Origin: Ophelia neglecta
Taxonomy: Eukaryota
Assembly (NCBI GenBank): GCA_965285935.1
Contig: OZ260661.1
Span: forward strand, 111,600,001-111,664,000
Direction: 5' to 3'
Length of the DNA: 64,000 nucleotides
Below the pieces are notes generated by a model. It had not been told where the DNA came from and did not search any database. It saw only the letters and a program-made list of their open reading frames with translations. Of the stretch, positions 6,720 through 59,182 are shown one piece after another. The translations under genes and the position numbers were made by a program. Position 1 is the stretch's first letter, and each line of letters begins with the position of its first letter.

Positions 6720-19915
<13,196 letters not shown>

Positions 19916-33408: not shown

Positions 33409-36054
33409 ATGCAGCTGACTACGTCGATTGTACTCGCCCTAGTGGCCATGTCCATCATAATTGCTCAAGGTAAGGAGACAAAACATAACGAAGCGGTATT
33501 AAGAGCCAATTTCTTATCGCGTTGAAACTTCAAACAAGCGATTTGGGAAAACTAAGACTTGCAATGTTTGCACGGTGATTAAAACACTTCAATTATGACT
33601 CAAGATTTCCAAAGTAGTAGGTCTAGGTCTATACTAGTACTGATGGAATTCAAAAATGCCCTTTCTGTGATTATTAAACTAGTTCTGAACGTTTCAGAGC
33701 TCAGTTAGATATTGGAAGCTTTTTCCAATAAACTTCAATGTACATGGCAAAAGTAAATAAACGAAGGTTTGCTTTTGATAACCATGTCAAGGAAAGGTTG
33801 TGAGATTATCACCTGAAAGTTAGCACATTATTATGGAAAGGGTCTGTGTCATAATAAGACCTGTGAGTCAATACGTACCCGAGCCACTAGTAACCATTAA
33901 TTGGCCACAAAAAAGGCAAACACGACTGTTAAATGAATTCTCTAGATTCAGCCATAGCATTTACCGGATATAAAGTGATTTGAGTTCAACAGATGTGTAC
34001 CTTATTAATGGATTGATGTATTTTTTTCAGTTGCGTCTCAGACATCCCCGTGTGTCTCGGCGCCGTGCCAAAACGGAGGAAGGTGCAGTACATCTGAAGA
34101 CCCGTATGGCTGGGGATATTACTGTATTTGTTCATCGCCGGCAGGAGGCAGGTCATGCCAATATGGTAAGTGTCTCTGCCGCTCGTGTTACCTGTAACGA
34201 AGAAACTAAAACACTATAAAAATAACAGGGAACCGTTAAGTTGTGTAGCTTACCGAAATAGATGCATTTAACAGTTTAAACACAATTAAACATCATGCAC
34301 ATGTCCATGAATTTCTCAGTGGCATGCCAGTAGTCATGGAACCATATTAAAGACTTTAATTTTAATATGGTCAATTCGGGAGAGGGCCATTATTAAAGCC
34401 TGCCTGAAAAATAAACAATCAATCAATTATAAAAGCCTGCCTGACCTTTGCCACACCTTTTCAAAATGACCTTCATTTGACAGAGAAATGTACAAATATT
34501 GGCTAGCTGAGATAGCGTTATGCATCTGTATTGGCCTGAAGCAGTGAGGTTTTTTGTTTTATGAAAGCGTTGGCTTTCGAGAAAATATCAATTGCTGCAG
34601 GCTTGTATAGCTCCGATTGCTTCCATAAATCAAGCCGTTTTATATATAGTTTATTGTTTGCAGACGACACCATCATCTGAATACTGAATAGTTTTACATA
34701 CATTTACATATTTTTTACTATTCAACTGACTATCTATACACATATGGAAAATAGCGTCGAAGATTTTAAATTATAGAATGTTTTTTTACAAAAGAGGGGA
34801 GCTTAACTTTGGGAGTTAATAGCCCCCCATATATTAGGGCAATAAACAGTAATTTTATAGTCCAGGGTGCATGCTGTGCACATGCAGTTGTATAAATAGC
34901 ATACAAAGGCAAAAGACAGCAACCCGGCAGCACAAGCCAGTAGAGTTACTGTTTTCCTCCCCTCACGGCAGACGTATATGATAATTATACGGCATAGGAG
35001 AAGTCAGATCACGGCCTTCTCATATTTTGAAATAGTTACTATTATACTGATACTAATCTGTTGTAGGAAGGTTGTTTTAAACCGATACATAGACCACATG
35101 TGAAACTTATAATTTCACAGAATGAATGAAAAACTGCAACTTCTTGGTTTCTAACAGTCCCGTGGATATTGGTTTTTAAACAATGATAGGCCTATATAAA
35201 ATTTGCTGGATTGCCTTGCAATTGTAAAGTTACTATGGACATCACTTTTTGGAACAAAGATTTAAATGATGAAATATATACACAGAAACAATTAATATAC
35301 AAACAATATTGGCCTTGTTAATAGGGAGAATGTTTAATTTATTACAAAATATGGTGCACTGTGAGTATATTTCTAAGCGCAAACTAGGAACAAGCAGATT
35401 GCCATATTACTCAAGTATTTAAAATTTGATGCCCCTCCGTGCCTTGGTATTTCTGTCAAGAGCTTCAAATGTGCATAGAAATGCGTATTTAAAATTGCCC
35501 GTGACTTTTATCTAGGTAATGTCTGGATTGTTCGAATTATTTAAGCGAATGGCATATCAAAAAATGCTATTCTTGCCACAACACGTGCTTTGAACGCCAG
35601 GTGCGGCGAGAATTGTGTCAGATATAAATCATCAATGTTCTGCCCGGGGTTAATTAGTGCCCTTATATTGTTCTCGACCAAAAACTTTTTGTTATAGCAT
35701 TCCATATACTAATTTTGATCCAAAGAACATTCAAAATATGATATTATTCAGCAAAAGGTGTATAAACTTTGCACACGTTTTACCGCATACTTTTCCAGTA
35801 AGACGACCGACTTAAGTTTAAAATTGGAATGTAACGTTATATGTCGTTCTATTAATTATCAAGAAAGAAATAACACGTTTATGTTAGGCCACATGTTCCA
35901 ATTATTTATTTTTGGTTTTTCTCCGATTGCAGGCAACGCGTGTGCCGACAACCCTTGTCCCCCAGCAGCAGTTCGCTGTATCCGTGCCCTGAATGACGAG
36001 GCTAAGGGTAGGCACTGCTTTGACCAAGACTGGCAGCTTGTCTTTGATCCATGA
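33409..36054 (+). CDS. Small secreted EGF-like protein A (signal peptide + EGF + 4-Cys half-EGF), 105 aa
   Basis: Exons 33409-33469, 34031-34165, 35933-36054, phase-1 GT-AG introns. MQLTTSIVLALVAMSIIIAQVASQTSPCVSAPCQNGGRCSTSEDPYGWGYYCICSSPAGGRSCQYGNACADNPCPPAAVRCIRALNDEAKGRHCFDQDWQLVFDP. AATAAA at 36320 and 36867. Same structure in the paralog. Confidence 0.9.
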
Positions 36055-39000
36055 AAAATTGAAAAAGAATTGTTAAGAACCATCCAACCCACCCGTGCAG
36101 GGTACACACCAACAGCTTTGTTCCAACCGTTCTAACCCGCGGCCATGTTTCTCATGTACATTGAAACCTGTGAATTGAGGCAACCCAAGGGTGGTCTGAA
36201 TATAGAGGTGGCCTTTAAAACAGGTATTTCTGTATGAGGTTGTATTCATATTTATAGGTTCCGGAGTTTCACTGAACTGTGTTAAGGCAAACAAATGTAC
36301 ATATGTACGGGTATATAATAATAAATACTATACCCCAACTCTTAACCATCTTGGGGGAGTCTATTTCACAATCAAACATGATTTTCATAACGCCAAATTG
36401 TATCAAACTATTTTTTGAAATGTATGCAATAACTATTTTTTGCTCTTCGTAGTAGAGAAAACTGCTCGGCACTCTCCGCCTGAAGTAAGGCGGTGAAGCT
36501 GTGTTAAGAGCATTTGCTTCGAAAGTAAACTATTTACAAGTAATTGCCATGTTTACAATCATTTTTAATAAGTTAATTTAATTTCATGGCAATTGTCCTT
36601 GCACGTTTTATTGTTGTATACTTGTGTAGCGTTTTCCGTCTAATAATGTGTTTGCATATTTGCAATGGAGTTTGTTAGGAACCAAATTGTATTTGATATA
36701 GTTTAACTGCTAATTAGTCAATATTAATGTTTAATAATACGTTTATGATTTTCATTGTTATCATAATTACTAGAGTAGAATTGATTAGTTATTAGAACGC
36801 TATACGATTTAAATTGTTTGTGGTCACATATAAGTGTCAAATGTTTAATTTATTTCCATTTTATCAAATAAAACAAATATCGTAATGGATTACCTTCATT
36901 AAATTTATATAACCCCTTTGCGGGATCTAGGACGGCAATGAGAGAATGTTTCATAAAATAACTCTGGACTGCTGTGTTTTAAAAAAGGGCGCTGATAAGC
37001 AGTATATTCCATAAAAATTATAATTGCCATTTAGCCTAATCCCAAAAAATAACGCAGAAAAATTAAGTCCTAATTATGGGAGGTTTTGGTTGAAAGGTCA
37101 TCGGGGCGAAATAATCTGTCCCCAAAATATCTTGACACTTGCAACAAAATATATATGGGCAAATATACAAAGTTCATTCTTGTAAAACGATGAAATAATC
37201 ATGGTTTGCGAGCCAACCATTAACGGGCTTTCCCAGCATCCGAAATGGTTGTTCAAACAACATTAATCACGTAATAGCGCGATACCACATTGCATATATA
37301 AAGCGAAAATGCAAGTGAAGTCATTTAAGTAAGTGTTCGGGTGACATATCACCCAGAAAACAATATCAACGCATTTTTACACAAAAATGAAACAAAAAAT
37401 TACGATATATAGGCAATAGTGTTGAACGGAAAAGCTTGAATAAAATAAAGTCGGCATCATTGGCACTCACTTGGTTATTCTCTACCTCCATTTGTAGGTT
37501 GTAGTGACACAATATATATATAAGACCCACACAGACTTGTATAAACTACCTATAGAGACTGTTATGTAATCCTATGCTAAGATAAATTGTGTATATATAT
37601 TGTGTTTTTTATGGTGCTGTAAATAAACTTTGTCAAAGTTGAGAACTAATCAACCTTGGCCTTTTCAAGCTTACCCTCTCTTATGTTTTAAGTCCAGTGC
37701 TACGATAAAAGACTTTAATTTCCCCATGCAGTGGCGCCTCCAAATATAAAGTTTTCAGGACCTACAAAATTCCTAGCTGGCATGTGATTGGCTAAGAAAG
37801 CCTAGCCATATATCATTCCAGAATATGTGTTTTTCATTAAATAGACACACTGTCTTGTTATTCGGGGATTATTCCAGACGCACACTGGTATTGTTGCCCC
37901 AATGGTGGCCATGCCAATGATAGGTCATACATTCTGCGTGGGCCATTTAAGGAAGCCCGGGTAACCGTAGGCTTATACACAGTTCCCTAAATATCTTGTC
38001 TCACGGACAATTGGTCCCAGAGATAAAATGTCCATCGGACATTTATAACCATAAAAATGTCACTCCCCTTCCGTCGGATATTATTACGCGGACAATATAT
38101 ATTTCGGGGGATATAATCTTAACAGGACATCTATGACTGGTATCTGGTGTCGAAGCGGAATGTCTAATCGGTTTAAACTGTCCTTGTGACATTTTATAAC
38201 AGGATATTATTAGGCCACCGACAAAGTTTACATTTTTTCTTGCTCACGTAGAAAAAAAATTGTCAACTAATGCTATGCTCAAACATGCAAACAAGCTGTG
38301 TTTCTTTAAGTGAAACACAGCAGGTTAGCCTGAGCAATATCACGAATAGTTGAAAAAAGACCAGCTATGCGCGCGTGTTAACATGTAAGATCTAGAGATT
38401 TTAATTACGTCCCTGCATCCTGCCATATGTCCATATATCTCGCAGTCAACTGCGAGATAATAAAACTGCATGTTTGCCCTCAAATCACCGACCCATATCT
38501 TCACAGGGATGTGATAAATGATTTTGCTGCGTCTGCCTCGTATCCCGTCCTTTTTATAATATAAAATAACTGGCTAGAATTCAGACTGACAACAGACTCG
38601 TCTGCGTTTGGTGGGATAGATAAATTTAATAACATTTTTTTCTTAAAAAGCTTAGCAAATGTGTCTTTAATACCCGAGAAGCTATGTAGCATATCACGAC
38701 TCATATTTCTAGTACACTACCTGCAGAACGTCAGAAATATTGTCGTTCCTCTTATTATCATTGCATCAGTGTGTCGCTATTATTGAAGTTACACGATACT
38801 GGTCTAATTTTTCAAACGTAGAAATTGCTCTAATCTAGATTGACATTTAATATGATACGTCTAGACGTAATATTATATATCATGTAGTAGCTCTATGATT
38901 ACCATATTTTTCAATTATATGAGATAAGTAATAAAGTATTGCCACCGTTTGTACTGCCCGAAGTAGCTTTACCTTTCTATAGTACATTTAATAGTGGTAC

Positions 39001-40464
39001 ATTCCTTTAAGCAAGAACAGCCCAGCATATACATGAGAGCGGGACCTTTTTTCAAAAAATACAAGACTTACGGGGCAAATGAAAGCAATGTTAATAGGTT
39101 CGGGGAGATGTTGCACAATCCTCACCAGCAGCTACACTTCTCAACTTGACGCCTTTAGTTATAATCCCGTATCATCTTGATTTGTGACCTTTGCAAATGA
39201 TCAAAACAAAATATCGGAGATGTTAGTGTCCAAATTATTGACCATAATTTATTGATATAATATCTAACAATAGTTTATACTCGCATACTCAATTGTATAA
39301 TAGTGATAATATATATTTGAAAACAAGTCTTATCTTAACATCGCCAACAAATATCTATGTACTATTATTTCAGTGTACCGTGCGCCTGTCTTACCTAAAG
39401 TACGTATGACTCACGTATAAAGTTAAACGCACCGATATTCTTAAGCAAGAAAAATATTTATTTTACTCAAGGAGAGCCAGTATACAATCAATGAATCTCT
39501 TTACGACTGTTTATGGCTGTGTAGGTTCTTGTTTCCATTGTTTGAACCACTACACAGAAAAATACTGTAATGACTTAGCGTGATATGATCCGCTCATTCT
39601 AAAGCTAATGGTCTAGTGCATCTGCTTCATACTGTAACATCGTTTGCTGTCACAATAAAAACGTTACTAGTCCACTTTGTTGATTTTAACATTTTTACAG
39701 GTAATTGGAATATACAAAGACCTTTATCCTCACACACCGTCCCCTTAACGTTTATTCACAGAAACGTTTACCATCTTAACACGTCAAAGCTAAGGTACAA
39801 AAAAAAAATGGCATGTCTCATATTGGCTACTGTACGCTAATTTCCTTATAACTTGCGCACTTTATGAAAAAAGTATGGCTTATATTGACTACTTTATGGC
39901 TATCGATAATTTAAATGCAGCGGCCAGCGCAGCAGATACTCTTAACAGTTACATCTAATTTACTAGAAATCAAAATAACTCAATTTGAACCTAGTGAACT
40001 CTACATCAGTGTTAACATAACACCTCCAATTAAACACAAACAGTCACCTGATAATACCCACACATTGTTTATTTGCTCATATATAATTACCTTGAAATAT
40101 TACATCTGCTGAATCCAATTGTATTCTTTAAAGGTAAACATATTATATTTACGCAATCCTGTATATGGCTACCATTTACACCATATAATTTTACATCCTC
40201 TATAGTGATAACTTAACTGAGAAGGGCAACTCCTGTACTTGGCAATATAAGGTCACAATAGCAAATAAAGTATTCAAATAAATAAAAGTTTGTTTTCCAC
40301 TCAACCTGAACCTTTCTGATACAACTATTAATAAAACATGTAATATTGTATAAATGTATTTGCAAATCTTGCAAACTTAATATCGACACATGATTTACAT
40401 TCATGTGTCCATATTTAATATTTCACTGAGAAATAAATGTGATACACAACTGTTCCAATTATAC

Positions 40465-41190
40465 GGTCTCAAGTAGAATTTATTTATGTATGGGCCGGTA
40501 TGACTTGGTTTTCACCCTGATTGACCTGACCAACCCATCATTTCAGGGAAAGTATCATGCAACGATGACTACTTGTGGCCAACTATTTCTAGGAACGCTT
40601 TCGTCAGCCACCAGAACTCCTTGCTGGAAATTTGGTGACTCTTTCTGCCATTTTTGGCTCAGCTGCAAAAATGGCAAATATTCACGTACCCTCCTTTGCC
40701 AAATAAACCGGTCATGAACTGAATCTGTCGCCACGTTCGTCTGCTGAAATGGGACTTGCTTTACAAACTGCTCGGAGGCAACTTTGCACCGGCAGGCAAT
40801 ACCGAAAGGTGATTGGGCTTTAAGGCTCTGAGTCTGCGGGGGCGTCCGACACCCTAGAAATTTCTCTATAAATAGCATGGCCTACGCCTCACACAACAGT
40901 TTCAGGAGACCCACATCATCCGAACTCTGCTCCCCGAGTATAGCATTCAACAATTTACGGACAGTTCTTTATCTGTCTCCCACATACTACGCCAGGGTGC
41001 GATGCTAAAGGATTGTTATAAATTTCATTTGTTTTCTCTCGTTGTTTGGAAAATCCTCTGTTTTCTTTTTTTTCCAATCTTTCATGACTTCCCTGAGCTG
41101 TTTCTCTCCGTTGACTTGGCTCGAAGCATTAATTGTCTCTTGGAATGTCCTCTGGTCGCCATGGTCGAGCTATGAATCGACTCAATATAT
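40465..41190 (-). mobile_element. Degenerate BEL/Pao LTR retrotransposon remnant (integrase core and C-terminal DUF5641-type region)
   Basis: RFIARPWRPEDI..DN, FIWQRRVREYLPFLQLSQKWQKESPNF..VLVADESVPRNSWP, DGLVRSIRVKT..RPIHK; stops and frameshifts; no LTR pair seen. Confidence 0.8.
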
Positions 41191-41632
41191 TAATGAATGC
41201 ACCAGTTTCTAGTGAACAGGTCAACTTTATTTTATCAGCATTACTGGGGAGGCAAGTAAATAAACAACCACATCACTTGTAAAGAGATTTGCTCGCTTAA
41301 TCAAAAAAGTACCGACAATAATTCAATGTTCCAATGTTCCAATGAATGGATACATATGATTTGTGTTTCCTGGTTACGATAACAATAGTATTTTAGTCTG
41401 GGTTTACTTATCCTACGACATTTTGCAAACGTTTAATACTGTGGTTGAGTGTTCTTTATTTTCTTTATATTTCTTTGTATTGATTATACAACAGTGATAG
41501 CCTTATATTCTCCGTATTTAGATTTTTTATCATTTGAGTTCATTTTACTTAAATTATTTAGGCCTAACAATGAGCCCTTTTGAACTGACTGTTTGTTTCA
41601 AAGTCACTTCTGTCAAGGCGTAGGTCACATAA

Positions 41633-41702
41633 GACAAAACACTAAATGGCCCACATGGTGCTTATAAATGGGTCGTTAAACCCCCAAATACAAGTCCAAA
41701 TC
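41633..41702 (+). mobile_element. Second very short 5'-truncated retroposon tail
   Basis: cactaaatggcccacatggtg...gtcgttaaacccccaaa...tccaaatc; 12-bp TSD taggtcacataa (41621-41632, 41703-41714). Confidence 0.75.

Positions 41703-43214: not shown

Positions 43215-43217
<3 letters not shown>

Positions 43218-43249
<32 letters not shown>
43218..43249. repeat. (AT)n microsatellite
   Basis: About 16 AT dinucleotides directly left of the hAT element. Confidence 0.95.
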
Positions 43250-43253
<4 letters not shown>

Positions 43254-44695: not shown

Positions 44696-44931
44696 ATATA
44701 TATCTGGGTGAGCCCATATCTACCCCATGAACAGTTAAACCGTCCCCAGAGCTTCGCATGAATTCATGAATGTCCATGTACGGGGCAGAGTAAAAGAACA
44801 TAGAGAGCATGCCTCCCTGCTGTTTGCTTCGTGTTATAGGAAACTCATCTAAAATGGTTCCATTCATTAGTACAGCCAATCTTGACTCCATCAGCATCTC
44901 TCTGAACTAATGCCAGTTTCCCGGTGATCCC

Positions 44932-45138
44932 TGTAGAACTCTGACTCTACGTATTTAAACAGAACTGATCCGATGTATAACTTTAATATATGTTTTATTC
45001 CAGGACATTCCCGCCTTGCTTGGCTCGACCTGATAGTAATCTACTTCCGGCCCACTATACCGTAGTGCCCCTAATATATATGGCGTCACCACCACAGTAC
45101 CATACGTGCCTGAATAACTTACATGCTCAAACACTACA
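44932..45138 (-). repeat. 3' LTR of Gypsy element
   Basis: tgtagaact...acactaca, identical to 49462-49668; polypurine tract (minus aaaaggaggga) adjoins at 45139-45149. Confidence 0.97.
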
Positions 45139-45435
45139 TCCCTCCTTTTGTTAAAACTATAATAATATTGAAACTTCTTAATGAATACTCTATATGATAT
45201 ATATGCAAATTAAATTGTATCCTATACTAATAAATGTTCATATCAAAATTGAGTTTGCATCGTTATCCTGTTTAAACCAAATGTCACTTGCAGCTTGCTG
45301 TGTGCTGCAATGAATTATATGCAGTCAACAATAATGTACTGTCACACATATATAGAATGTCTCAAATACTAAATTAAATATATATCCTCTCTCAGGTAGT
45401 TAGGCTTAAACATACTTGTAGAACTTTAATTAATT

Positions 45436-48400
45436 TTAGATCATCTCAAAATCTTTATATTTTGCTGGTAGCCTTCTGCTTCTTGCGGACATCTCTCGAG
45501 CTGGTATTTGTTTAGGTGTTATAGCGGGGCTTGGTACTTTAACTGGTGTACCAACAGGTAAGTTTATTGTTTCTGCCGCTTGAGATGTCTGGCTTTCCAC
45601 TGTTTGTTCACCTTGTTCGACAAACTTCTTCTTATGTGCCACATTTCTCTTATACAGCACATTTTCTGGAGATTTAATTACCACGCTATTGCCCTGTTTT
45701 CTCATAACTTCATACGGATCTGTAGCATAGTGTGTAGAAAGTTTTCCTTCTTTTCTCTGTTCAACTAACACTTTATCTCCAACTTGAATGTCTCGTTCGA
45801 CAGCTTTTCTCCTACTGTCAGCATATAACTTTCCTCTCATTTTCATTTCTGAATCTTTGTCCCTGATTATTGTGTCAAATTCAGTGTCTCTAAGTTCAGG
45901 GAGTTTTGTCCTTATTTTTCTGCCAAATAAAAGTTCTGCGGGTGGTATTCCCGTCGTACTGTGGGGAGTTGTTCTGTAGGCTGTTAGAAATGTATTCAGT
46001 TCTTTTCTGAAGTCCTTCTTTTCTGCATGGCATATTTTCAAAAATTTTACCAGTGATTTATTTTGGATTTCTACTTCTCCATTTGCCTGTGCCCAATATG
46101 GTGTCACACGTCTGTGATCTATTCCTAAGTTCTCTAAATAGTCACTCATTTCTTTTGAAGCTAGCTGAGGTCCATTATCACTGGATAATGTGACAGGTAA
46201 TCCATGAGTAGCAAAAATGTCATCCAAAGCTTCAATTGTCTTTTCAGCAGTAATGGTTTTCATAACCTTGACCTCATAGTACCTGCTATAGTAGTCTACC
46301 ACTACAAATAAATTATGTCCTGAGGGCAATGGCCCTAAGAAATCCACACAAACGTCTTGCCATTTGCCAGGGGGCAGTTCAGTTCTCACCATAGGTTCTG
46401 GGATAGATACCTTTTCAGTTAATTGACAGCCATGACAAGCTTTGCACAACCTTTCTGCCTCCTGGTCAATGCCTGGCCACCAGACTTTAGTCCTTAGTCT
46501 TTGCTTAGTCTTTACTATCCTCTGGTGCCCTTCATGTGCTATTTCCAATACTCTGTTCCTCAGAGACTGTGGTATTACCAATCTTGTTCCCCTCAGTATT
46601 ACATGTTCACCAATCATTGTAAGTTCATCCTTCACCAACAAATATCTTTTGTCTGGCACTCTGTCAAAGTTTCCACTGCGGATACACATACTGAGCCCAC
46701 ACAACTCTGAATCTTCTGCCGAGGCCTCCTTGACCTCTTTTACGGTGACAGCTCGTGGCACTGAAGATTCTGCTATGAATTTTACATATTCTTCTGCTCT
46801 AAGGCTGGTTGATATAGGTTTACTTGCTGGCTCAGAGTTTAACAATCTGGACAATGGATCAGCAATGTTGTCCTTGCCTTTGATATATCTCACATTAAAC
46901 TTGTATGGTAACATTCTAAGCAACCATCGTTCGATTCTTGCTGATGGTTTAGAACTTGGCGAGAAAATCATTTCCAACGGTTTGTGGTCCGTTAGTAAAT
47001 CAAACTCTGTCCCTAGAAGATACATGTGAAATCTCTCGCAAGCCCATACCAAACCTAGAGCTTCTTTTTCTGTTTGTGAATAACGGCGCTCAATGTCTGA
47101 TAGGCTGTAGCTGGCATAGCATACTACTCGTTGCTGGCCATCTTGTTCTTGGATCAGGATACCACCAAGGCCAACAGGACTCGCATCAGCGATCACAGTT
47201 GTTTTACAACCTAATTTGAAATATGCCAATGTTTCTGCGGTACACACTCTGGCTTTTATTTCACTGAATGCCTTTTGCTGTTCCTGACCGAATTTGAAAC
47301 TTTCTCCTTTCCTGGTTAATTTCCACAAAGGTTCAGCAATGGTTGCCAAGTCTGGTATATATCTAGACAAAAAACCAATCAGTCCCAAAAAACTACGAAC
47401 CTCTTGAACATTCTTAGGTTCTCTTGCCTCTTTCACGGCTTTCACTTTACTTTCTGTTGGGCCTAGTCCTTTCTCTGATAACACATGTCCCATAAATACC
47501 AGTTTTGTCATTTTGAAAACACATTTTTCTTTATTCAGAGTAAGTCCATTTTCTCTAATAGTGTTCATCACTTTCTCTAATCTTTCATCATGCTCTTTTT
47601 CATTTTTCGCATGGACTATGATATCGTCTGAGATGTTCTTTGCACCTTCACAGTCTTGGAAGACTTCCTGTAATGTTTTCTGATAAATTTCAGGTGCTGA
47701 GCTTATGCCAAACATTAGGCGCTTATAACGAAAATTGCCTTTGTGTGTTGTGAAAGTTGTGATGTCTCTTGCTGCTTCTGATAACTCAAGCTGGTGGTAA
47801 CCCGAACGAAGGTCGAGTTTACTAAACACAGTGCTTTCGTTCAGATCAGAAAGTACTTCGTCCACTGTAGGAATAGGAAATCTTTCCCGTATTATGGCCT
47901 GGTTTGGTCTCCTCATGTCCACACATATTCTCACATCACCATCTGATTTGGGAACAACAACAATGGGGCTTGCCCATTTTGTAGGCCCTGATACTGGTTC
48001 TATGATGTCTAGTTTCATGTATTCATCCAATCTGGCTTCGATTTTCTTGCGCATGCTGAAAGGGGGGCGTCTATATTGTTGAACGACTGGTTTAATGTCT
48101 GGATTGACATGAATGTCAATCTGACGGCCTTTCAGTTTTCCAATGCCTTGGAATACATCACTGTAACTGTCAGATACAGAGTTCACAGACTTATTAGGGA
48201 GTCCTATACTTAACACTCCTAGTGCTTTTGCTGTCTTCCTTCCTAGCAACGGTTCACCTTTAGTGTCCACCACTACTATTTCTGCAAGAGTTTTCACGTT
48301 CGACACACGTAGTTCAGCTTTAAACACACCAATAACGGGTAGGGGAATTATTGAACCATAGGCAAACAGTTTCTTTGAACACTTCGAGGTTTTACACTTG

Positions 48401-49422
48401 ATATGCTGCTTCTTTAGATTTTTCCACATCTGCTTGTCAATAATGTTGCAGCTGGCTCCCGAGTCCACCATCATTTTCACTGGGATGCCTCCTAGACTTA
48501 GTGTAATTTTATCTGCCTGCTCAGTGTTTACAGCAAATGTGTAGGAACTGTCATCACTGTTTTCATACTTCTCTTCAGTACAATTGACCTTCTTTGTTTC
48601 ACTGCTAGAGTTTTTCCTACTGTCCCTTGTCTTACAACAGCGTGAAAAGTGGTCCTTCAATCCGCATTTTTCACAGATTTTGCCTCTCGCAGTACAATTA
48701 GGATCACTGGCTTTATGTCCAAGTCTCCCACACCGATAACACCGGGGACCTGTACCATAATTCCTTCCAGCATTACTATTTTGTTGTCTGGGGTTACTGG
48801 ACTTATTCCTGTGAGATTGTTTATTAGGTTTAGAACAAATTTTGCTTACACTCTCGGCTCTAGTGTCCCTTGACTCCATTTGGCTCATCTGGGAGTCAAC
48901 AGCCTCCACGGATCTTGCGATGGTCTGGGCCTGGGTTAGAGTCAAATCTCTGCCTTTCTCTAAAAGTTTCCTCTTAATGGTGGTTGACATACAGCTTTGA
49001 ATTATTTGATCCCTCACCTGATCGTCTTTGTCAGTAAAGTCACAGTATTCAGCCCTCTGCAGCAGCCTGCCAACAAATTGGTCCACTGATTCTTCCTTTT
49101 CCTGCTTTAGACCTCTAAACATGTGTCTTTCTAAGGGGACATTCACAAACGACTTAAAATAAATGTCCAATTTTCGAAGGGTTTTCCCAAGTTCACTTTC
49201 ACCTTCTACTGCAGGCGGCTCCGGTAAATTCTCGTATATGTCCTGTACATCTGATCCAGCACAGTGTAGCAGCCATGACGCTTGTTGAGCGTCCTCCGTG
49301 ATTCCTTTCCCCTTTATATAGTAATCAAAACCGCGCTTCCACTTTTTCCATCGTGGAGCAATTGTGTTTTGTTCCTTCGTGTCAAACACAGGAAACGATT
49401 CGCTGCTCACCAGTGAAGCCAT
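45436..49422 (-). CDS. Gag-Pol polyprotein (zinc knuckles, protease, RT, RNase H, integrase), 1328 aa
   Basis: CYRCGRLGH..C and CEKCGLKDHFSRCC knuckles; VDSGAS protease; RT ISDDII; RNase H ADASPVG..EKEAL..TDHKPL; integrase HEGH..CHGC, VDF, SDNGPQ, NGEVE; Gypsy order PR-RT-RH-IN. Confidence 0.97.
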   Translation of the reverse strand: MASLVSSESFPVFDTKEQNTIAPRWKKWKRGFDYYIKGKGITEDAQQASWLLHCAGSDVQDIYENLPEPPAVEGESELGKTLRKLDIYFKSFVNVPLERHMFRGLKQEKEESVDQFVGRLLQRAEYCDFTDKDDQVRDQIIQSCMSTTIKRKLLEKGRDLTLTQAQTIARSVEAVDSQMSQMESRDTRAESVSKICSKPNKQSHRNKSSNPRQQNSNAGRNYGTGPRCYRCGRLGHKASDPNCTARGKICEKCGLKDHFSRCCKTRDSRKNSSSETKKVNCTEEKYENSDDSSYTFAVNTEQADKITLSLGGIPVKMMVDSGASCNIIDKQMWKNLKKQHIKCKTSKCSKKLFAYGSIIPLPVIGVFKAELRVSNVKTLAEIVVVDTKGEPLLGRKTAKALGVLSIGLPNKSVNSVSDSYSDVFQGIGKLKGRQIDIHVNPDIKPVVQQYRRPPFSMRKKIEARLDEYMKLDIIEPVSGPTKWASPIVVVPKSDGDVRICVDMRRPNQAIIRERFPIPTVDEVLSDLNESTVFSKLDLRSGYHQLELSEAARDITTFTTHKGNFRYKRLMFGISSAPEIYQKTLQEVFQDCEGAKNISDDIIVHAKNEKEHDERLEKVMNTIRENGLTLNKEKCVFKMTKLVFMGHVLSEKGLGPTESKVKAVKEAREPKNVQEVRSFLGLIGFLSRYIPDLATIAEPLWKLTRKGESFKFGQEQQKAFSEIKARVCTAETLAYFKLGCKTTVIADASPVGLGGILIQEQDGQQRVVCYASYSLSDIERRYSQTEKEALGLVWACERFHMYLLGTEFDLLTDHKPLEMIFSPSSKPSARIERWLLRMLPYKFNVRYIKGKDNIADPLSRLLNSEPASKPISTSLRAEEYVKFIAESSVPRAVTVKEVKEASAEDSELCGLSMCIRSGNFDRVPDKRYLLVKDELTMIGEHVILRGTRLVIPQSLRNRVLEIAHEGHQRIVKTKQRLRTKVWWPGIDQEAERLCKACHGCQLTEKVSIPEPMVRTELPPGKWQDVCVDFLGPLPSGHNLFVVVDYYSRYYEVKVMKTITAEKTIEALDDIFATHGLPVTLSSDNGPQLASKEMSDYLENLGIDHRRVTPYWAQANGEVEIQNKSLVKFLKICHAEKKDFRKELNTFLTAYRTTPHSTTGIPPAELLFGRKIRTKLPELRDTEFDTIIRDKDSEMKMRGKLYADSRRKAVERDIQVGDKVLVEQRKEGKLSTHYATDPYEVMRKQGNSVVIKSPENVLYKRNVAHKKKFVEQGEQTVESQTSQAAETINLPVGTPVKVPSPAITPKQIPAREMSARSRRLPAKYKDFEMI

Positions 49423-49446
49423 CTCGGGTTCCTTGAATGATCTGAG

Positions 49447-49459
49447 ATCCTCGTCGCCA
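49447..49459 (-). other. Primer-binding site, probably tRNA-Ser(GCU)
   Basis: Minus strand TGGCGACGAGGAT 2 nt after the 5' LTR; complementary to ...AUCCUCGUCGCCA, which I recall as the 3' end of metazoan tRNA-Ser(GCU). Confidence 0.8.
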
Positions 49460-49461
49460 GT

Positions 49462-49668
49462 TGTAGAACTCTGACTCTACGTATTTAAACAGAACTGATC
49501 CGATGTATAACTTTAATATATGTTTTATTCCAGGACATTCCCGCCTTGCTTGGCTCGACCTGATAGTAATCTACTTCCGGCCCACTATACCGTAGTGCCC
49601 CTAATATATATGGCGTCACCACCACAGTACCATACGTGCCTGAATAACTTACATGCTCAAACACTACA
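49462..49668 (-). repeat. 5' LTR of Gypsy element
   Basis: 207 bp, identical to 44932-45138. Confidence 0.97.
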
Positions 49669-52600
49669 ATCCCTAATTTAGCCATCTTGAACAGCATGCC
49701 GTCCACCACACTCGATCAAACGCTTTTTCGGAGTCCAAAAAAGCAACGTAAACTTTACTTCCGTGTTCCACGAAGTGATTTATCGACTCCTACACCCCAA
49801 AGGATAACATCACATTGCTTGACTCCTTTTTGGAGTGCTGTAATTTATTAGGGAATCTGACATCATGAAGAAAAGGCTGGCATCTGTTCCAAACCAACTT
49901 TTCGTACAGTTTATTGACTGCAGGTAACAAGGTTATACCGCGATATGAATTCTGGTCGGTTTTCTCTTTGTATTTTCCTATGTAGAGTGGTAAAACTATT
50001 CCTAATTTGTACATTTTTGGAACATAAACGGCGGAAGTTATGGCATTAAAAAGTCTGTTCAACACCTCCGCACAGAGCGGGCTCGCGCACTTCAAAAGTT
50101 CATAGCACACATTGTCCCAACCAGGTGCCTTACCATTTGGTAGATTTCTTATAGTTGTCACAGTTTCTTCGACCCTGAATGGTTCTTGTAAGGGTCCGAC
50201 ATTATCTACGTTTTTGTCCAAAGAGTTCACCAATACTTTGACATCGGCACTAATAGTTTTTGCAAAGACTTCGTCATAAGTTCTTGCTTCGTCCGATTGT
50301 TCATTAAGCAATTGACAAAAATGGTGCTTTCCAAAATCGCCTAATTCATCTGGATTACGAAAAAACAGAGTCTTTAATTAAATGTAAGGATTCGGGTGAC
50401 TTTCGGTTTCGTCGCACATATCGCCAGAAAGATTTCAGGTCATATTCGCTCTGGTTCTGAGCTTTTTCATAGCGTACTTGTTGGCGACCTCTTGATTTCG
50501 AATATTGCATAATTCGGAACTTAGTTTAGGAGTTTTTATACTCCTTGAACGACGTGTATTCAGAACTCCTGGGTCTTCCCTTGCGAATCCACTGGGAACG
50601 CTTTTTCAACTGAAGCTTATGTGCTATTTCTAATTCAGTGCCCCAATAATCATTTTGAAACGACTCGGTGCAATATTTTTGCACTGCATGGTCGGCGGCT
50701 TTAGTTAGAGAGTCGCTTAAAATAGTTGCTAATTTGTCATTTCGTCCTTCGATTCACTCACGCTATAGTGGCTAAGTGATCAGAAAGAATAGAATCTAAG
50801 ACTAACACAAAGGCAGCTTTGTCAACCTTAGCCCAGTTTAAACGAGAAATCACAGCGTATTAAGGCAGGTCACATGACAATTCACAATATATAGGTAAGT
50901 GATCTGAAGTGTTTAACACTTCGCTTTCCATAATCCTGCACTTTACAAAATCATTTGCTAAATACAAATGTGGTCAATCAATGTACATTGACCTCCGTTA
51001 TGCGGTCGTTGGGTATGTTTGGCCCAGAACGATCAGGTAAATCACAAGTAGTTATCATTTTACAACAGTCTAGTAATGATTGAAAAGATGACACTCGCTT
51101 TGCCGTGTCACTGCCATTACTTTTATACAAAATCATACTTTGCGAGTTAAAATCACCAACAAATAATACCACACCAGTTTGCTCATAGTATGTCTGAATA
51201 TTACCAAGATCCCGCAGACATTCTTCATAAAAATCAGTCTTACAGTTCGTACTAGGCATATATATTATAAAGATCTTGTTTGTCAACCGTGTGTGACAGA
51301 CGAATACCTATGACCCTGTCATTACCTACATCTTGTAACTTAGAAACTGCGTAAGCTATATCTTTACGCCAGAAAATTACAACTCCTCCGGCTCTACCGT
51401 GGCTTAATGATTCCATTCTTCCATCAGCGAGGGCATATACATCAAATTCGGGGTTTGACGAAGTTAAGAATGACAATGAGGATTATTTGAGATGGTGATC
51501 CTGAATATATAATACATCACATAAGTCAAGTAGACAACACATTTACTTAGTAGACGCCATCGCGCCCCAACAATTATATGATATAATACGTAGAGAAGCC
51601 ATAATTGGATTAATAGAACACATGGTCATTATCTATACTGGCTTTCACCGTTCAGTTCGTATGACCAGGGTCCTATAGATACCCCCCTGGCCAAAACGAT
51701 TCTCTCCCTACTTCATCTGCGTCTTGGGGTTTTACATTTATCTTGGAAGACAGATATCGACCAGTACTTCGTAACATTTGGCTATATGTGACATTTATTT
51801 CGTGATGAGCTAAATAATTTTTAACCAGTGTATATGTATGATCACCATTTATTTTGAGTCTGATGCTTCCGAGGTAAAAAGCTACATTTCTTGCTTTTTT
51901 GCTCACAAGTCTATAACCCTCGAGATCCTTTCCTCCGTTAAGACCGATTGTGACCTGTTATTGGAAAGTCGCGTGTCATCAGAGGTGCCGAACTCGCTAG
52001 CTGTAGAAGCCGCTTGGCTGTAACGGGGTGATTATCGGTGGTCGGCTGTGTTCGCTGAGTCATTACAGAATGCCTGTCAGCTTCTTTGTCCTTTGCCACA
52101 GCACCTAAATGGGGTATTGGCTCTGCATGTGGAGACTGGTAAACTTTAGTGGCTACTGGACGATTGGCGTCCCCAGTAGCCGAGCGTGTAGCTTCGTCTT
52201 CTTGGTTGTTTATGGCTCTCATCAGACCCGTTATATTGCCATGAGCCATATCCACACCTATGTTAACTTTATCCAAAGTTTCCACGATGTTTTCTTGTTT
52301 TTCTTAATTGGTTCGATAATCTCTCGGGTTCTAGTTTCAAGATCCAGCATCAGATGTCTATTTTTCTCACTGAGCAGTTCCGTAGATTTCTCTAGTACAT
52401 CGACTCTGTGTTCTAGGACGGCGTTCACAGCTTTAATATCTGCTATCTCTCGCCTTAGTTCATTATTATTAATTTGGCTTGTTTTCATTATGTGTTTGCT
52501 AATTTCAACCAACACACCTAGCTCGGATTGGCTGGTTTTGGTTTCAATTGTTTTTGTTTTCTCTACAGATTCGGCTTGGGAAAAACTATCCTTATATACT

Positions 52601-53504
52601 GCGTCTTCAATATCATCTTTATCATCATTTTCTTCCTCGTCTTCAGTAAGCATTTCATTAAAACTGCTTTCTAAAGAACATTCTGGTTCTTGAGTGTTTG
52701 TTTTTAATATTTTCCTAGATTTTTCACAAAACATTTTTATTATATCTATGCAAGTGTCGCCTTGAGAAAAATAAAAGAGGTCGTAAACATCATGTGCAAG
52801 CTTCCCGGCCGCACTTTGGTGACCCTCTATATTCTTCCTAAGTATTAGTTTACCCCTAGGTGTTCCGTCAATATTTACTCTGCAGTAGTCATAAACTATT
52901 GGACTCTTCTCGCTTCTATGGATGTTCTAAGGAATTCTTTTGCGCTTCGAATAAAGCCATGAAAGTAACGTTACAGTAATTTTCGCAGTACATTGAGCTC
53001 TAGTAGCAATTGGGCAAATTTTACTTTGTCTACTGATCAATATTTTATCGAGCTGTTAACGTTGTGAAGAAGTATCAGAATTGTTAAGGTAATTAAGATG
53101 CACTTAGATGACATAATGTATTACTAATCGATGGATAATGTCTAAACTCAAAACACCACATGTTACCATACCGAGAGAGCGAGGGAGGATTGCATTCATC
53201 ATTTCTTATTGATCCCAACTATCAAAAAAATATGCATGCATCTGTGGCATTTTATCAATTTTATTGAATTAATAATATACTGATGTAAATGACTAGCTGC
53301 TGGTGGGTCGAACCATTTAATTATTATCTATAGGTTAACGGTTATTCGTTTACAATTCTAAATCAATTTATCGAATAATGTTTAGACTGGTTTATAAGCA
53401 TTAAAGTCATGACTTGGATATCAATAGCTGGTCAAAGTTGAAAAACACACACCACTTAATACATTTTTTTCTGGTCAGTCGTTAATTACACTAACATAAG
53501 AGCC

Positions 53505-56500
53505 ATGCGACACACGACTAAGATTCTGATCGCCCTTCTGGGAATATGTACCATTTTAGCCCAAGGTAAGGAACATTAATACAGCTTTTCAAAAGCAATA
53601 ATGATTCTTATAATTTGAAAAATTAAATTTATTGTGCGGGTATGTGTATGTACTGATCCTACACGCACTAAGGATCGAATAAAAATGAAGAAATAATCGT
53701 TAGTGTCATGACCAACTATATGAATGTTTTTCGATTGCAAGTGTTTAATACAGAATCATAATTTATTGAAATGCACATATTCTCAAGCATTAATTTCATC
53801 GATGCAGTAGGAATCAATATCGCTTACTTCTAAACCTCATACAGGTTTTTTTTATAGTTGTTGCCAAATCTCCTATGTGCACTACCGGTCCACCATTTAG
53901 GAATTTTTGAATGACACAAATTGTTACCGTTAAATTTAAAAAATGCACAATTGCATTTATGTTCTTGGCACTATTTGGTATAAAGAAATGTATGCTTCTG
54001 GAATGGAAAATGCTGCTTTTGACCCTAGAAATTTCTCAACAAGTCTGGAAACAGAAACCCACAAGAAAGTAAAAACACCTATAGATGGGCATCATTCTGG
54101 CCGACCGGAACCTCATATGCGCATCCTCCTGACTGGTTTAAACCAGCCATCTGCTGACTTATTCAATTTGTCTTATTTAGTAAATATTTTAAAGATGTAA
54201 GTCGCAATGTTGATATCACAACTTATTGTCACACGTAGAATGTATGCATTTCGTATGCACGCATTCTCGACCCATAGAACTCTGTCAAGGTTCTCTGTCC
54301 AGGACCTCTTTCCATACCTTAACACCCTTGTGATATGCTTAGTAATATGGCCATGTCTATTGACGATTTAACGCTGGCTACACTTTCAATCTTTCTATCT
54401 CGTCAGTTGCACCTCAGTCCCTGTGCGACTCGGCACCGTGTCAGAATGGAGGAGATTGTAGCACAGAGGAGGATCCCTATGGATGGGGATATTACTGTAC
54501 CTGTTACGACCCGAGTGGAGGTAGATTATGTCAATACGGTAAGATCAATGCTGTCCGAAAACTAGAAGGGATTGACTGTTTGTACATGTGCGCGAATATA
54601 CAGTTTCAGTATCAAGCTATTATGAAATAAATAAAGTGACTCATTTATTCTGAAGACATGTTGCGATATGAATTATTGTTGTGACGGAGGCGATGATCCT
54701 GTCACAGAGGAAGATACGATCTTATTGTGTCTTCTATTGGATGACCACCTTTTCTAACTACCTGAATTTGGCTGCAAGTGTACAAAACTGTACAAAACTA
54801 GCAGTAACCCGTTGAAACACCCACACCTGAGGCAGGCACGTGGAGCAAGAAATAAATGTCTAGATTCAAATGAACTTGATGAACATGTACAAAACAGTAA
54901 ATTGGAGGATCTTTTCATGCAACGGGGCAAAATCTAAAGTGGTAATGGCAGTTACATGTCAGGCATTTAACGCTGACTTGCAAAATGAGGCACCTTGACA
55001 TTATTTCGCTGTTTTATATATAGTTCAGGCTATGATTTGCTGGTCAAGTATGGAATGTCAGTCTTGAAGCCTAGCAGTGTCGCTTTCTTCATCATCAAGG
55101 ATCACATTGCAAAATATCCGGTGGCAGCATTTCAAAATCCTGCCCATCCACCCATCCCACCCCAGCCTACCGCCTACTGGTGCCCCCTTCGTCACACTCC
55201 GGCCTCATGTAAAATACCAGGCACATCAACTGCTAAAATACAGTCTCGATTTAGGACAAAAACGCTTGAAAATAAGTAAAACTCTTTTATTTCCAATGTC
55301 GACTTTTCTCGACATTTCCTCTCACTGCCAATGTCGACTTTTGCCGACTATATGATATTTTGCCATTGATGACGTCATACTAATTACCATAAAAGGTTAA
55401 GTTAATATGGCTACTGCCTGACTATTTCATAGTTAGCTAAGCACGTTACCTGTGGAATTTTCAAAGTATAATACCGATACCCATAGGTAAATTAATACCA
55501 AGTTGGCATTACATTGAGTTTACACATGTAAATGGACATAAATTGGCAGAAATAGGCATGTAGCTGGGACAACCTATAAATAGGTGGCACTGAAGTCCCT
55601 GAACTCTTGGTAATTCCGGAACCTTCAATGTTTTTTTTGTGCTGCCTATTGGTGCGTCCATATGTCAAATCTTGATTCCTGTTTGCTGTTGCGGGAGTTT
55701 TTGCGCTCTTGGACACTATGTGCTTCCTGTTGCTTCACGCCTGCTGTCCTGTCGGGTAAACTGGCCACAGCTAGAGCCATGGTGGGTGGTGCAACCTCAC
55801 TCCAACGAAGTATTAAACATTATACTGTTGACGGACTGGAAATTCATTTTTGTTTTACGCCTGTGACTGATGGTTCCAGAAAGATTTCGGGCCGATTGAA
55901 TAGACTAATCCTGGTTACTGCTTTTGCTTTATCTGCCTGGTATCCACTACCGCGTTTTGTCTCTGTTGATAACTGGTCGAAATTTCTTGTTCTCAACTTG
56001 ACAAAGAAATGAGTATGTATAGTCACCAGACTGACAAGTGAATATTCTGCCATTAAGGACACGAAAGTTAGGGCCACTTTTAATATACTTTTGTTAAATA
56101 TTTTATCTTCCACATTTACCAGATTGCATTTGAATATTATCTTACTTTTGAATTGTTTAAACAATTGTTTAACATAGCTAATTAATTATAAAACCCATAT
56201 TTAAAAACGAAACAAGGCAAGAAAGGTATATTTCAATGTTCATATAACAATTAATAAACGACTTAAGTAAAGATTAAAATGGCAAAATCTGAAAAGAAAA
56301 AAATATTTTAATACTATAGACAGGAAATTTTTCAATTTGGAGGTAAAGGGTTACATTTCTTTGGATTCACTGAGAAGGGGATGTGAGATGGACACAAACC
56401 CTGGTGCCAACTAGCATTTTACCCATAGAAAGTTGCACCTACAGCAAAGTACAGAAGTTTTAAGCACATCTATATTGTGACTATTGCTATAATTTGCATC

Positions 56501-56638
56501 TTCATTCCAGCTAACGCCTGTCAAGAACATCCTTGCCCTTCGGCAGATCATCGTTGCTTTCGCACATTGTCGGATGACAATTATGGCAGAAATTGTTATG
56601 ACCGAAATTGGAATTTGGTTGAAGAGCCTGCTTCCTAA
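53505..56638 (+). CDS. Small secreted EGF-like protein B (paralog of A), 106 aa
   Basis: Exons 53505-53565, 54407-54538, 56511-56638, phase-1 GT-AG introns. MRHTTKILIALLGICTILAQVAPQSLCDSAPCQNGGDCSTEEDPYGWGYYCTCYDPSGGRLCQYANACQEHPCPSADHRCFRTLSDDNYGRNCYDRNWNLVEEPAS. Acceptor at 53478; AATAAA at 56766. Confidence 0.9.
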
Positions 56639-59160: not shown

Positions 59161-59182
59161 ATTATTATATATATTTTAAACC

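What the first reader, a model, noticed from the sequence alone, without database searches (positions are those of the whole stretch)
33409..56638. Tandem pair of hidden genes encoding ~105-aa secreted 'one-and-a-half EGF' proteins
Seen: two genes about 20 kb apart with identical three-exon, phase-1 architecture: signal peptide exon, full EGF exon (C-x4-C-x5-C-x12-C-x1-C-x8-C) and a terminal exon with four Cys. No transmembrane segment or other domain. The full EGF is 30/38 identical between copies, with many synonymous changes (e.g. GAC CCG TAT GGC vs GAT CCC TAT GGA), while I see no intron similarity, which suggests old duplication and purifying selection. The ORF track reads the EGF exons in the wrong frame. 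Knowledge: small free EGF peptides act as toxins (sea-anemone gigantoxin I) or signalling/matrix peptides (sea-urchin EGIP). Inference: a lineage-specific family of secreted ligands, decoys or toxins; I do not recognise this architecture.
Basis: partly seen in the sequence, partly recalled or inferred. Interest (0 to 1): 0.8.

Follow-up and report, generated by a model that had tools for sequence, protein, structure and literature searches.

The report
Small secreted EGF-plus-cap protein genes
The window holds two intact three-exon genes for about 105-residue secreted proteins made of one EGF domain plus a truncated EGF "cap"; they belong to a small, uncharacterised family whose named members are all annelid, so this is a modest new variant of a very common protein type.

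Summary
Gene A (33409-36054) and gene B (53505-56638) each have a 61-nt signal-peptide exon, a full EGF exon and a terminal 4-Cys exon. All introns are phase 1 with GTAAG donors. Between A and B, synonymous sites are saturated (pS 0.77) while pN is 0.24. DNA similarity stops at the exon edges.

The "pair" is part of a larger family.
- Four B-type partial copies lie just downstream of the window. They lack exon 1 and three carry frameshifts.
- Three distant paralogues lie elsewhere in the genome.

Relatives exist in Lamellibrachia, Ridgeia and Capitella, where they are named only "hypothetical" or "EGF-like". Others sit on unnamed contigs, including one apparently spliced mRNA with an extra Sushi-like module. 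The EGF-to-cap intron sits at the same place and phase in every copy examined.

The EGF is Notch/factor VII type, not EGFR-ligand type, and it fails the published DOS consensus. The cap matches no Pfam or PDB sequence.

No RNA run exists for this organism, so splicing and expression here are inferred. Function is unknown; I favour a soluble extracellular binding protein.

The parts
33409..33469 (+). Gene A exon 1: ATG, 20 codons of signal-peptide-like sequence plus 1 nt (phase 1), donor G|GTAAGG
   Evidence: It is one of only two such sites on both strands of the window, and its similarity to B exon 1 is reached by 0 of 20,000 shuffles. Mean Kyte-Doolittle 2.66 over residues 5-18.
34031..34165 (+). 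Gene A exon 2: full EGF (6 Cys, loop EDPYGWGYYC), phase 1 at both ends
   Evidence: Pfam EGF 24.2 bits, above the 21.5 cut-off. Pattern confirmed. DNA similarity to B runs 34027-34170 only. O-glucose-type site CVSAPC.
34112..34112 (+). G/T variant in the DNA runs of the source sample: TGG (Trp) to TTG (Leu) in the PYGWGYY loop of gene A
   Evidence: table 3. T is carried by the long contig in all three runs, and G is also present in two of them.
35933..36054 (+). Gene A exon 3: truncated EGF cap (C-x4-C-x6-C-x12-C-F-D-x-x-W-x-L-V), stop TGA at 36052-36054
   Evidence: No Pfam hit. A profile of this module finds 7 proteins or ORFs elsewhere, and in all three full-length models the match reaches within 0-3 residues of the C-terminus.
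53505..53565 (+). Gene B exon 1: signal-peptide-like, 61 nt, phase 1, donor G|GTAAGG
   Evidence: It has no copy anywhere else in the 114 kb examined.
54407..54538 (+). Gene B exon 2: full EGF
   Evidence: Pfam EGF 16.1 bits, below the cut-off. 76% identical to A exon 2.
56511..56638 (+). Gene B exon 3: truncated EGF cap, stop TAA at 56636-56638
   Evidence: (51% identical to A exon 3).
54306..64000 (+). First unit of a tandem repeat of about 12.5 kb. It starts inside intron 1 of B and is repeated four more times beyond the window (copies C-F).
   Evidence: 81-95% DNA identity between units.

Best explanation
A and B are two old paralogues of a small family of stand-alone genes whose named members are all annelid.

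Product (inferred, about 0.8). Each gene encodes a secreted protein of about 105 residues. It has a cleaved signal peptide, one Notch/factor VII-type EGF domain with three disulfides, and a C-terminal "cap". The EGF carries an aromatic C3-C4 loop (EDPYGWGYY) and, in A and B, a C1-x-S-x-P-C2 site of the kind that is O-glucosylated in Notch EGFs. The cap is the first two thirds of a second EGF. It keeps the four Cys expected to pair C1-C3 and C2-C4, and ends in C-[FY]-D-x-x-W-x-L.

Origin (inferred). All modules are bounded by phase-1 introns, the classic exon-shuffling layout. Other members add a Sushi-like module (copy G on contig C5 and the mRNA-like contig L031), an acidic Asp/Glu/Ser tail (copy I), or a Thr/Pro-rich linker with an RRRR site (tubeworms).

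Shown: the gene structure, its conservation and purifying selection.

Mode of action (weak inference, about 0.3). The mature protein is a soluble extracellular binding module that docks onto another surface or matrix protein through the aromatic loop and the conserved Trp of the cap. That would make it a diffusible ligand or modulator rather than an enzyme or membrane receptor.
For: - Exon structure and consensus splice sites.
- The two first exons are unique in the window and similar to each other.
- pS 0.77 against pN 0.24, Fisher p 9e-15. A-B DNA similarity is confined to exons.
- Nine loci in the same genome share the EGF-to-cap intron position and phase. So do Lamellibrachia, Capitella and an unnamed Logan contig.
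- The cap profile finds P0001-P0007. In all three full-length models the match reaches within 0-3 residues of the C-terminus. P0008 from Ridgeia is 79% identical to P0001.
- L031 is a 1470-nt contig with an uninterrupted ORF for signal, Sushi-like module, EGF and cap, with stops in all frames upstream and a 460-nt 3' tail. It looks like a spliced mRNA of a stand-alone gene.
- The EGF type is Notch, Delta or factor VII.
- The AF2 model of P0001 aligns over residues 14-91 with two consecutive Notch EGFs.
Against: - No RNA run exists for this organism, so splicing, expression and secretion of A and B are not observed.
- One haplotype of A carries Trp to Leu in the conserved loop.
- The B-type copies C-F are decaying.
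- In Lamellibrachia an annotated astacin-MAM gene model ends in a copy of the family's EGF exon, so some members might be tails of larger proteins.
- The AF2 model is only moderate (pLDDT 70; the other four models 49-56) and the VIA Z-scores are at most 4.6.
- Nothing here tests binding.
Confidence: 0.6

Rival explanations
1. The genes and products are as above, but the protein is a structural component of a secreted material (cuticle, chaetal or tube matrix, mucus, adhesive), not a diffusible ligand.
For: - Family members carry matrix-like additions. Copy I has an acidic Asp/Glu/Ser tail of about 50 residues. The Lamellibrachia EGF exon has a Thr/Pro-rich mucin-like linker.
- Small EGF-only proteins serve as adhesives in molluscs: Pvfp-5beta (PDB 7qab) matches P0001 weakly at E 0.009 (PMC9314366).
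- Tandem duplication with decay is common for such genes.
Against: A and B are not Tyr/Lys/Gly-rich and have no repeats or low-complexity region. There is one EGF plus a cap rather than a polymerising array. No proteomic evidence exists.
Confidence: 0.2
2. The EGF and cap exons are the 3' end of a larger transcript, for example an astacin-CUB-TSP1-MAM protease, and the proposed first exons are not used.
For: - In Lamellibrachia the 890-aa astacin-MAM model ends by reading through a copy of the family EGF exon.
- In this genome, copy G lies 20-35 kb downstream of an astacin-CUB-EGF-TSP1-MAM gene on the same strand.
- All exons are phase 1, so they could be joined to other modules.
Against: - A and B each have their own conserved signal-peptide exon 560-840 nt upstream.
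- No MAM match is listed near the window (6 of 156 matches were not shown), and no protease-like ORF lies in 14-33.4 kb.
- A-B similarity is limited to the three exons.
- L031 shows a stand-alone mRNA in a relative.
Confidence: 0.08
3. A and/or B are unexpressed relics that are still intact by chance.
For: No RNA data. Copies C, D and F have frameshifts and all of C-F lack exon 1. There is a Trp to Leu allele in A. B against E shows 7 non-synonymous changes to 1 synonymous.
Against: A and B diverged to synonymous saturation while keeping frames, all ten Cys, the splice sites and the stop position. That requires long-term selection on both lineages.
Confidence: 0.08
4. They are toxins or defence peptides of the EGF type, like gigantoxin.
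For: Small, secreted and disulfide-rich, in a tandemly duplicating family.
Against: The EGFR-ligand cysteine spacing is not met. The nearest solved relatives are Notch and factor VII EGFs. The family is conserved at about 50-60% identity across distant annelids, which is unlike fast-evolving venom genes. No gland expression data exist.
Confidence: 0.04

Closest known systems
Uncharacterised annelid proteins: KAI0240337.1 (Lamellibrachia satsuma), NP493_954g00077 (Ridgeia piscesae), ELU09642.1 / CAPTEDRAFT_202252 (Capitella teleta)
   Same: Same family. EGF with the EDPYGWGYY-type loop, followed directly by the 4-Cys cap at the C-terminus. 41-58% pooled identity to A and B. The phase-1 intron is at the same place in Lamellibrachia and Capitella (Ridgeia's gene was not examined).
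   Different: Their annotated N-termini differ and look incomplete, with no signal exon in the tubeworm models. Tubeworm genes have a Thr/Pro linker and an RRRR site in the EGF exon. None has a described function, and no paper in the library cites their identifiers.
Notch / Delta / factor VII-type EGF repeats (Pfam PF00008, hEGF type)
   Same: Cysteine spacing, the PCQNGG motif and the O-glucose consensus. P0001 matches Notch1 EGF arrays at E 2e-15 and factor VII EGF1 at 3e-6. The first module superposes on factor VII EGF1 and Notch EGF12 at 1.6-2.1 A.
   Different: There is one complete repeat only, on a free protein of about 85 mature residues. The C3-C4 loop is long and aromatic. The second repeat stops after C4 and is replaced by a conserved [FY]-D-x-x-W-x-L end.
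C. elegans DOS-motif proteins (OSM-11, OSM-7, DOS-1 to DOS-3) and DLK1
   Same: Small secreted proteins whose defining motif is one EGF plus the part of a second EGF that precedes its C-x-C. That is also a one-and-a-half EGF, and they act as soluble Notch co-ligands (PMC2504490).
   Different: The published DOS consensus is not met by any family member or exon. The spacings differ (C1-C2 of 4 against 3, C3-C4 of 12 against 2-5) and the Trp lies after, not between, the last cysteines.
Secreted EGFR ligands without a membrane anchor: Lymnaea L-EGF; sea-anemone gigantoxin I
   Same: Small secreted EGF-fold proteins of invertebrates. [quoted passage not shown]
   Different: The EGFR-ligand spacing (C-x7-C..., quoted from my own knowledge) is absent. 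Neuregulin matches only at E 0.2-0.7. Those proteins have no cap module.
Mussel foot protein Pvfp-5beta (PDB 7qab)
   Same: A secreted lophotrochozoan protein of about 80 residues built only of EGF motifs (PMC9314366). Weak sequence match to the EGF of P0001, E 0.009.
   Different: It has two complete EGFs and a Tyr/Lys-rich adhesive composition. A and B are mildly acidic and not Tyr/Lys-rich.

Membership tests
EGF-like domain (Pfam PF00008) | Six cysteines with C-x-C and a score above the curated cut-off of 21.5 bits | tested here: met
   A exon 2 scores 24.2 bits. B exon 2 scores 16.1 bits, below the cut-off, but has the identical cysteine pattern and is 76% identical to A.
Annelid EGF-plus-cap family (unnamed; P0001, P0002, P0003, P0008) | An EGF followed after five residues by C-x4-C-x6-C-x11-12-C-[FYL]-[DST]-x-x-W. 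The protein ends 4 to 10 residues after the Trp. | tested here: met
   Alignments A1 and A4 and the profile hits. Copy I is an exception, with an added acidic tail.
Annelid EGF-plus-cap family (unnamed) | Phase-1 intron two codons plus one base after C6 of the EGF | tested here: met
   A, B, G, H and I. Lamellibrachia, Capitella and the Logan contig L033.
EGFR ligands (EGF / TGF-alpha / neuregulin, L-EGF, gigantoxin) | Spacing C-x7-C-x4-5-C-x10-13-C-x-C-x8-C (consensus quoted from my own knowledge) | tested here: not met
   No exon or relative matches the pattern. Neuregulin E 0.2-0.7 against Notch 2e-15.
DOS-motif proteins | The DOS consensus as printed in PMC2504490 | tested here: not met
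   The regular expression, whole and in two halves, matches none of A, B, G, H, I or P0001-3 and P0008. For A and B it was tested exon by exon.
Calcium-binding EGF (EGF_CA) | Match to the Pfam cbEGF models (the acidic Ca-binding motif before C1) | tested here: not met
   No EGF_CA hit at E up to 10 for either exon of A or B.
Secreted protein (classical signal peptide) | N-terminal n/h/c regions and no later hydrophobic segment | tested here: inconclusive
   There is a hydrophobic core (mean KD 2.3-2.7) and both exons end in A-Q. No dedicated predictor was available and no protein data exist.
Expressed, spliced gene in this organism | Reads or contigs joining the exons | not testable with these tools
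   Only three DNA runs of one sample hold the locus. No RNA run was found.

The most novel reading that the evidence does not exclude
The EGF-plus-cap unit is an annelid counterpart of the nematode DOS proteins. It would be a diffusible one-and-a-half-EGF co-ligand or antagonist for Notch or another EGF-repeat receptor. The minimal genes A and B would have arisen by exon shuffling from a Sushi-EGF-cap gene that sits next to an astacin-MAM protease in two distant annelids, and the family might be functionally tied to that protease.
Probability: 0.08. Interest if true: 0.7.

Novelty: new variant of a known kind. Interest (0 to 1): 0.38.

Why it matters
If the models are right, annelids have a conserved and so far unstudied family of very small secreted proteins. 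Its second module is a defined truncation of the EGF fold that no domain library describes. That offers:
- a clean natural test of whether the C1-C3/C2-C4 half of an EGF can fold and function on its own;
- a new C-terminal module to add to domain databases;
- candidate soluble ligands or matrix factors in a phylum with few characterised signalling peptides.

It also shows how such three-exon genes are missed or mis-joined by annotation, as in the tubeworm models. It is not a new kind of system. EGF modules, phase-1 exon shuffling and lineage-specific cysteine-rich secreted proteins are all familiar.

Tried and rejected
- RNA evidence. The look-up of sequencing runs returned only three DNA runs of one sample. 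Read laying therefore confirmed only the DNA and one variant.
- Word-index protein searches were blank for the cap of A (open frame 35719-36051, region 72-111) and for the EGF of B (open frame 54364-54627, region 15-59). The tool's length window and 5-mer requirement limit what these blanks mean.
- The joined (spliced) protein of A or B was never built, searched or folded. All searches were exon by exon, by reference. The contiguous relative P0001 was folded instead.
- Cap profile against PDB sequences gave only chance hits, E 0.6 and above. Pfam gave nothing for the cap.
- ESM Atlas with the cap of P0008 scored 0.84 at best, with only generic EGF clusters.
- Literature searches for the accession numbers and run ids of the relatives found no paper.
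- The EGFR-ligand and DOS consensus patterns were not met.
- First exons for copies C-F do not exist in the 114 kb examined. First exons of G, H and I were not identified convincingly.
- A first alignment that mixed whole proteins and cap pieces (A2) mis-aligned the start of the cap onto the start of the EGF and was discarded. The mis-alignment itself shows how EGF-like the cap's first eight residues are.
Full report
**Observation**

The window is G000:C1:111600001-111664000 of a 762-Mb genome.

Gene A:
- Exon 1 is 33409-33469. It starts at an ATG, runs 20 codons plus one base, and has the donor G|GTAAGG.
- Exon 2 is 34031-34165. It follows a pyrimidine-rich ...TTTTCAG acceptor and ends G|GTAAGT.
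- Exon 3 is 35933-36054 and ends in TGA.

Gene B:
- Exon 1 is 53505-53565.
- Exon 2 is 54407-54538.
- Exon 3 is 56511-56638 and ends in TAA.

The coding lengths are 318 nt for A and 321 nt for B including the stop, which gives 105 and 106 residues.

Exon 2 carries the spacing C-x4-C-x5-C-x12-C-x-C-x8-C in both genes. Exon 3 carries four Cys. Pfam sees an EGF in exon 2: A scores 24.2 bits, above the 21.5 cut-off, and B scores 16.1 bits, below it. Pfam sees nothing in exon 3.

**Is it more than chance?**

- *First exons.* I scanned both strands of the whole window for an ATG followed by 15-30 open codons, one extra base, a GTAAG donor and a hydrophobic core. Exactly two sites qualify, and they are the two proposed first exons. 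The two peptides are identical at 9 of 20 positions. None of 20,000 composition-preserving shuffles reaches their score.
They give pS 0.77, which is saturated, against pN 0.24. That is 52 of 68 synonymous sites changed against 58 of 238 non-synonymous sites, Fisher p 9e-15.
- *DNA similarity.* blastn between the two loci finds only 34027-34170 against 54403-54543 (73% identity, E 4e-18) and a weak collinear hit over exon 1. The introns show nothing.

The duplication is therefore old, and both copies have been kept in frame. Both retain all ten Cys, the splice sites and the stop position.

**The family in this genome**

Six-frame searches of the whole genome with exon 2 and exon 3 show that the "pair" is the upstream end of a row. 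I call the four further B-type copies C, D, E and F. They lie at C1:111.667, 111.680, 111.692 and 111.705 Mb.

They belong to a tandem unit of about 12.5 kb. The unit begins at window position 54306, inside intron 1 of B, so these copies have no first exon. B's exon 1 region has no other match in the 114 kb I assembled.
- Copies C and D share a 1-nt deletion in the EGF exon that leads to a stop.
- Copy F lacks one G of a GGGG run.
- Copy E has an intact EGF exon and an altered exon 3 acceptor.
- B against E shows 1 synonymous and 7 non-synonymous differences, which is consistent with neutral decay.

I read C-F as pseudogene fragments. The frameshifts rest on the assembly alone.

Three distant paralogues also exist.
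- **G** is on contig C5, with its EGF exon at 36026627-36026758 and its cap at 36027355-36027468.
- **H** and **I** are on C1 near 98.57 Mb, on the minus strand.
- I carries an extra Asp/Glu/Ser-rich tail of about 50 residues after the cap.
- G has a Sushi-like exon (four Cys and a Trp in the CCP pattern) about 300 nt upstream of its EGF exon, also phase 1. Pfam did not confirm the Sushi call on the related P0003, so this is my reading of the pattern.

**Relatives elsewhere**

Two word-index searches by reference were blank. Because the claim rested on absence of relatives, I ran the exhaustive profile search with an alignment of six cap exons (A1). Seven proteins or ORFs pass E 0.001. In all three full-length models the cap match reaches within 0-3 residues of the C-terminus (residues 56-92 of 92, 163-197 of 199 and 158-190 of 193).
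- **P0001** is KAI0240337.1 of Lamellibrachia satsuma.
- **P0002** is ELU09642.1 (CAPTEDRAFT_202252) of Capitella teleta.
- A further search with P0001 found **P0008** of Ridgeia piscesae, 79% identical.
- All three are named only "hypothetical" or "EGF-like domain-containing". No paper in the library mentions their identifiers.
- **P0003** lies on a 1470-nt Logan contig (L031). Its ORF is uninterrupted and encodes a signal-like start, a Sushi-like module, the EGF and the cap. Stops in all frames lie upstream and about 460 nt follow the stop. This looks like a spliced mRNA of a stand-alone gene with the same architecture as copy G.
- The other four hits are cap-exon ORFs on genomic contigs of unnamed sources.

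The intron between EGF and cap lies two codons plus one base after C6, in phase 1. This holds in A, B, G, H and I, and in Lamellibrachia (L032), Capitella (L036) and contig L033. Pooled identity of A or B to the relatives is 41-58%, against 62% between A and B. The named relatives are all annelids.

**What the modules are**

The EGF is of the Notch / Delta / factor VII type.
- P0001 matches Notch1 EGF arrays at E 2e-15 and factor VII EGF1 at 3e-6. Neuregulins match only at E 0.2-0.7.
- An AlphaFold2 model of P0001, built with the family alignment A4, has mean pLDDT 70. The other four models score 49-56.
- The first module superposes on factor VII EGF1 and Notch EGF12 at 1.6-2.1 A over 38-43 residues.
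- Residues 14-91 align with two consecutive Notch1 EGFs at Z 4.6 and rmsd 6.3 A. This is weak but consistent support that the cap occupies the place of a second EGF.
- The cap's first eight residues (N-x-C-x-x-x-P-C) are so EGF-like that MAFFT aligned them onto the start of the EGF.
- The cap alone matches no PDB sequence and no Pfam model.
- A and B carry C-x-S-x-P-C between C1 and C2. From my own knowledge, this is the consensus for O-glucosylation of Notch-type EGFs. Some relatives instead carry the O-fucose consensus.

**Tests against known small-EGF families**

- The EGFR-ligand spacing is not met.
- The DOS motif of C. elegans OSM-11 and of DLK1 is conceptually the closest known thing. 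It is defined from the first Cys of one EGF to the Cys before the C-x-C of the next (PMC2504490). Its printed consensus matches none of the family.
- Pvfp-5beta, a two-EGF mussel adhesive (PMC9314366), matches only weakly (E 0.009) and has a different composition.

**Could A and B be tails of a larger gene?**

In Lamellibrachia an 890-aa astacin-CUB-EGF-TSP1-MAM model lies immediately upstream. It ends by reading through one of two 99.7%-identical tandem copies of the family's EGF exon. In this genome an astacin-CUB-EGF-TSP1-MAM gene lies 20-35 kb upstream of copy G, on the same strand. That conserved neighbourhood is notable and unexplained.

For A and B the evidence points the other way.
- No MAM match is listed near the window (where 6 of 156 matches were not shown).
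- The ORFs of 14-33.4 kb show nothing protease-like.
- Each gene has its own conserved signal exon.
- L031 shows a stand-alone transcript in a relative.

I put this rival at about 0.08.

**Limits**

No RNA run is available for this organism. The three runs that hold the locus are DNA of one sample, probably the assembly's source. They confirm the sequence and show one variant inside gene A, 34112 G>T, which turns the Trp of PYGWGYY into Leu on one haplotype. Splicing, expression, secretion and function of A and B are therefore all inferred. The spliced proteins of A and B were not joined, searched or folded; work was exon by exon, by reference.

**Verdict**

These are real, old, constrained small secreted EGF-plus-half-EGF genes. 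They are not unique to this genome and are not of the EGFR-ligand or toxin type.
- They belong to an uncharacterised family whose named members are all annelids and whose cap module is not in domain libraries.
- Function is open. I favour a soluble extracellular binding protein (about 0.3), with a matrix or mucus component as the main alternative.
- Novelty: a new variant of a known kind.
- Interest: moderate to low.

Noticed in passing
window 44932-49668 (minus strand): LTR retrotransposon between genes A and B. It has two identical 207-nt LTRs (44932-45138 and 49462-49668) and one intact 1328-aa ORF with protease, RT, RNase H and integrase domains, so the insertion looks very recent. Observed only.
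   Followed up: partly
window 49790-52734 (minus strand): Several ORFs of 100-170 aa that look by eye like pieces of a non-LTR retrotransposon. Pfam gives no hit at E 0.001.
   Followed up: partly
window 36152-36191: A 40-nt stretch about 100 nt after gene A's stop has summed contig word depth of 36,000-76,000, against about 12-30 for its surroundings, with many divergent flanks. It is the end of a very high-copy repeat.
   Followed up: no
G000:C5:35990900-36005330 and 36026132-36027468 (loci L039, L037, L026); L032 1-11227: An astacin-CUB-EGF-TSP1-MAM gene lies upstream of the Sushi-EGF-cap copy G on the same strand. The same neighbourhood is seen in Lamellibrachia satsuma, where the protease model ends in a copy of the family's EGF exon and a 360-bp tandem duplication (99.7% identity) holds two copies of that exon. 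This could be conserved synteny or one larger gene; it is unresolved.
   Followed up: partly
L030 about 6800-7078 (minus strand; G000:C1:98576800-98577078): Paralogue I extends past the cap with about 50 residues that are almost entirely Asp, Glu and Ser. It also has a longer C5-C6 loop in its EGF and an intron of only about 110 nt.
   Followed up: no
L032 5562-5693 and 5941-6048: In Lamellibrachia the EGF exon starts with a Thr/Pro-rich stretch and an RRRR site. The RRRR site is conserved in Ridgeia (P0008). This suggests a mucin-like linker and a possible proprotein-convertase cleavage that A and B lack.
   Followed up: no
window 6720-16850 (plus strand): The upstream neighbour appears to be an unrelated gene with a 323-aa Ser/Glu-rich ORF and coiled-coil-like ORFs. 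No Pfam family passes its threshold.
   Followed up: no
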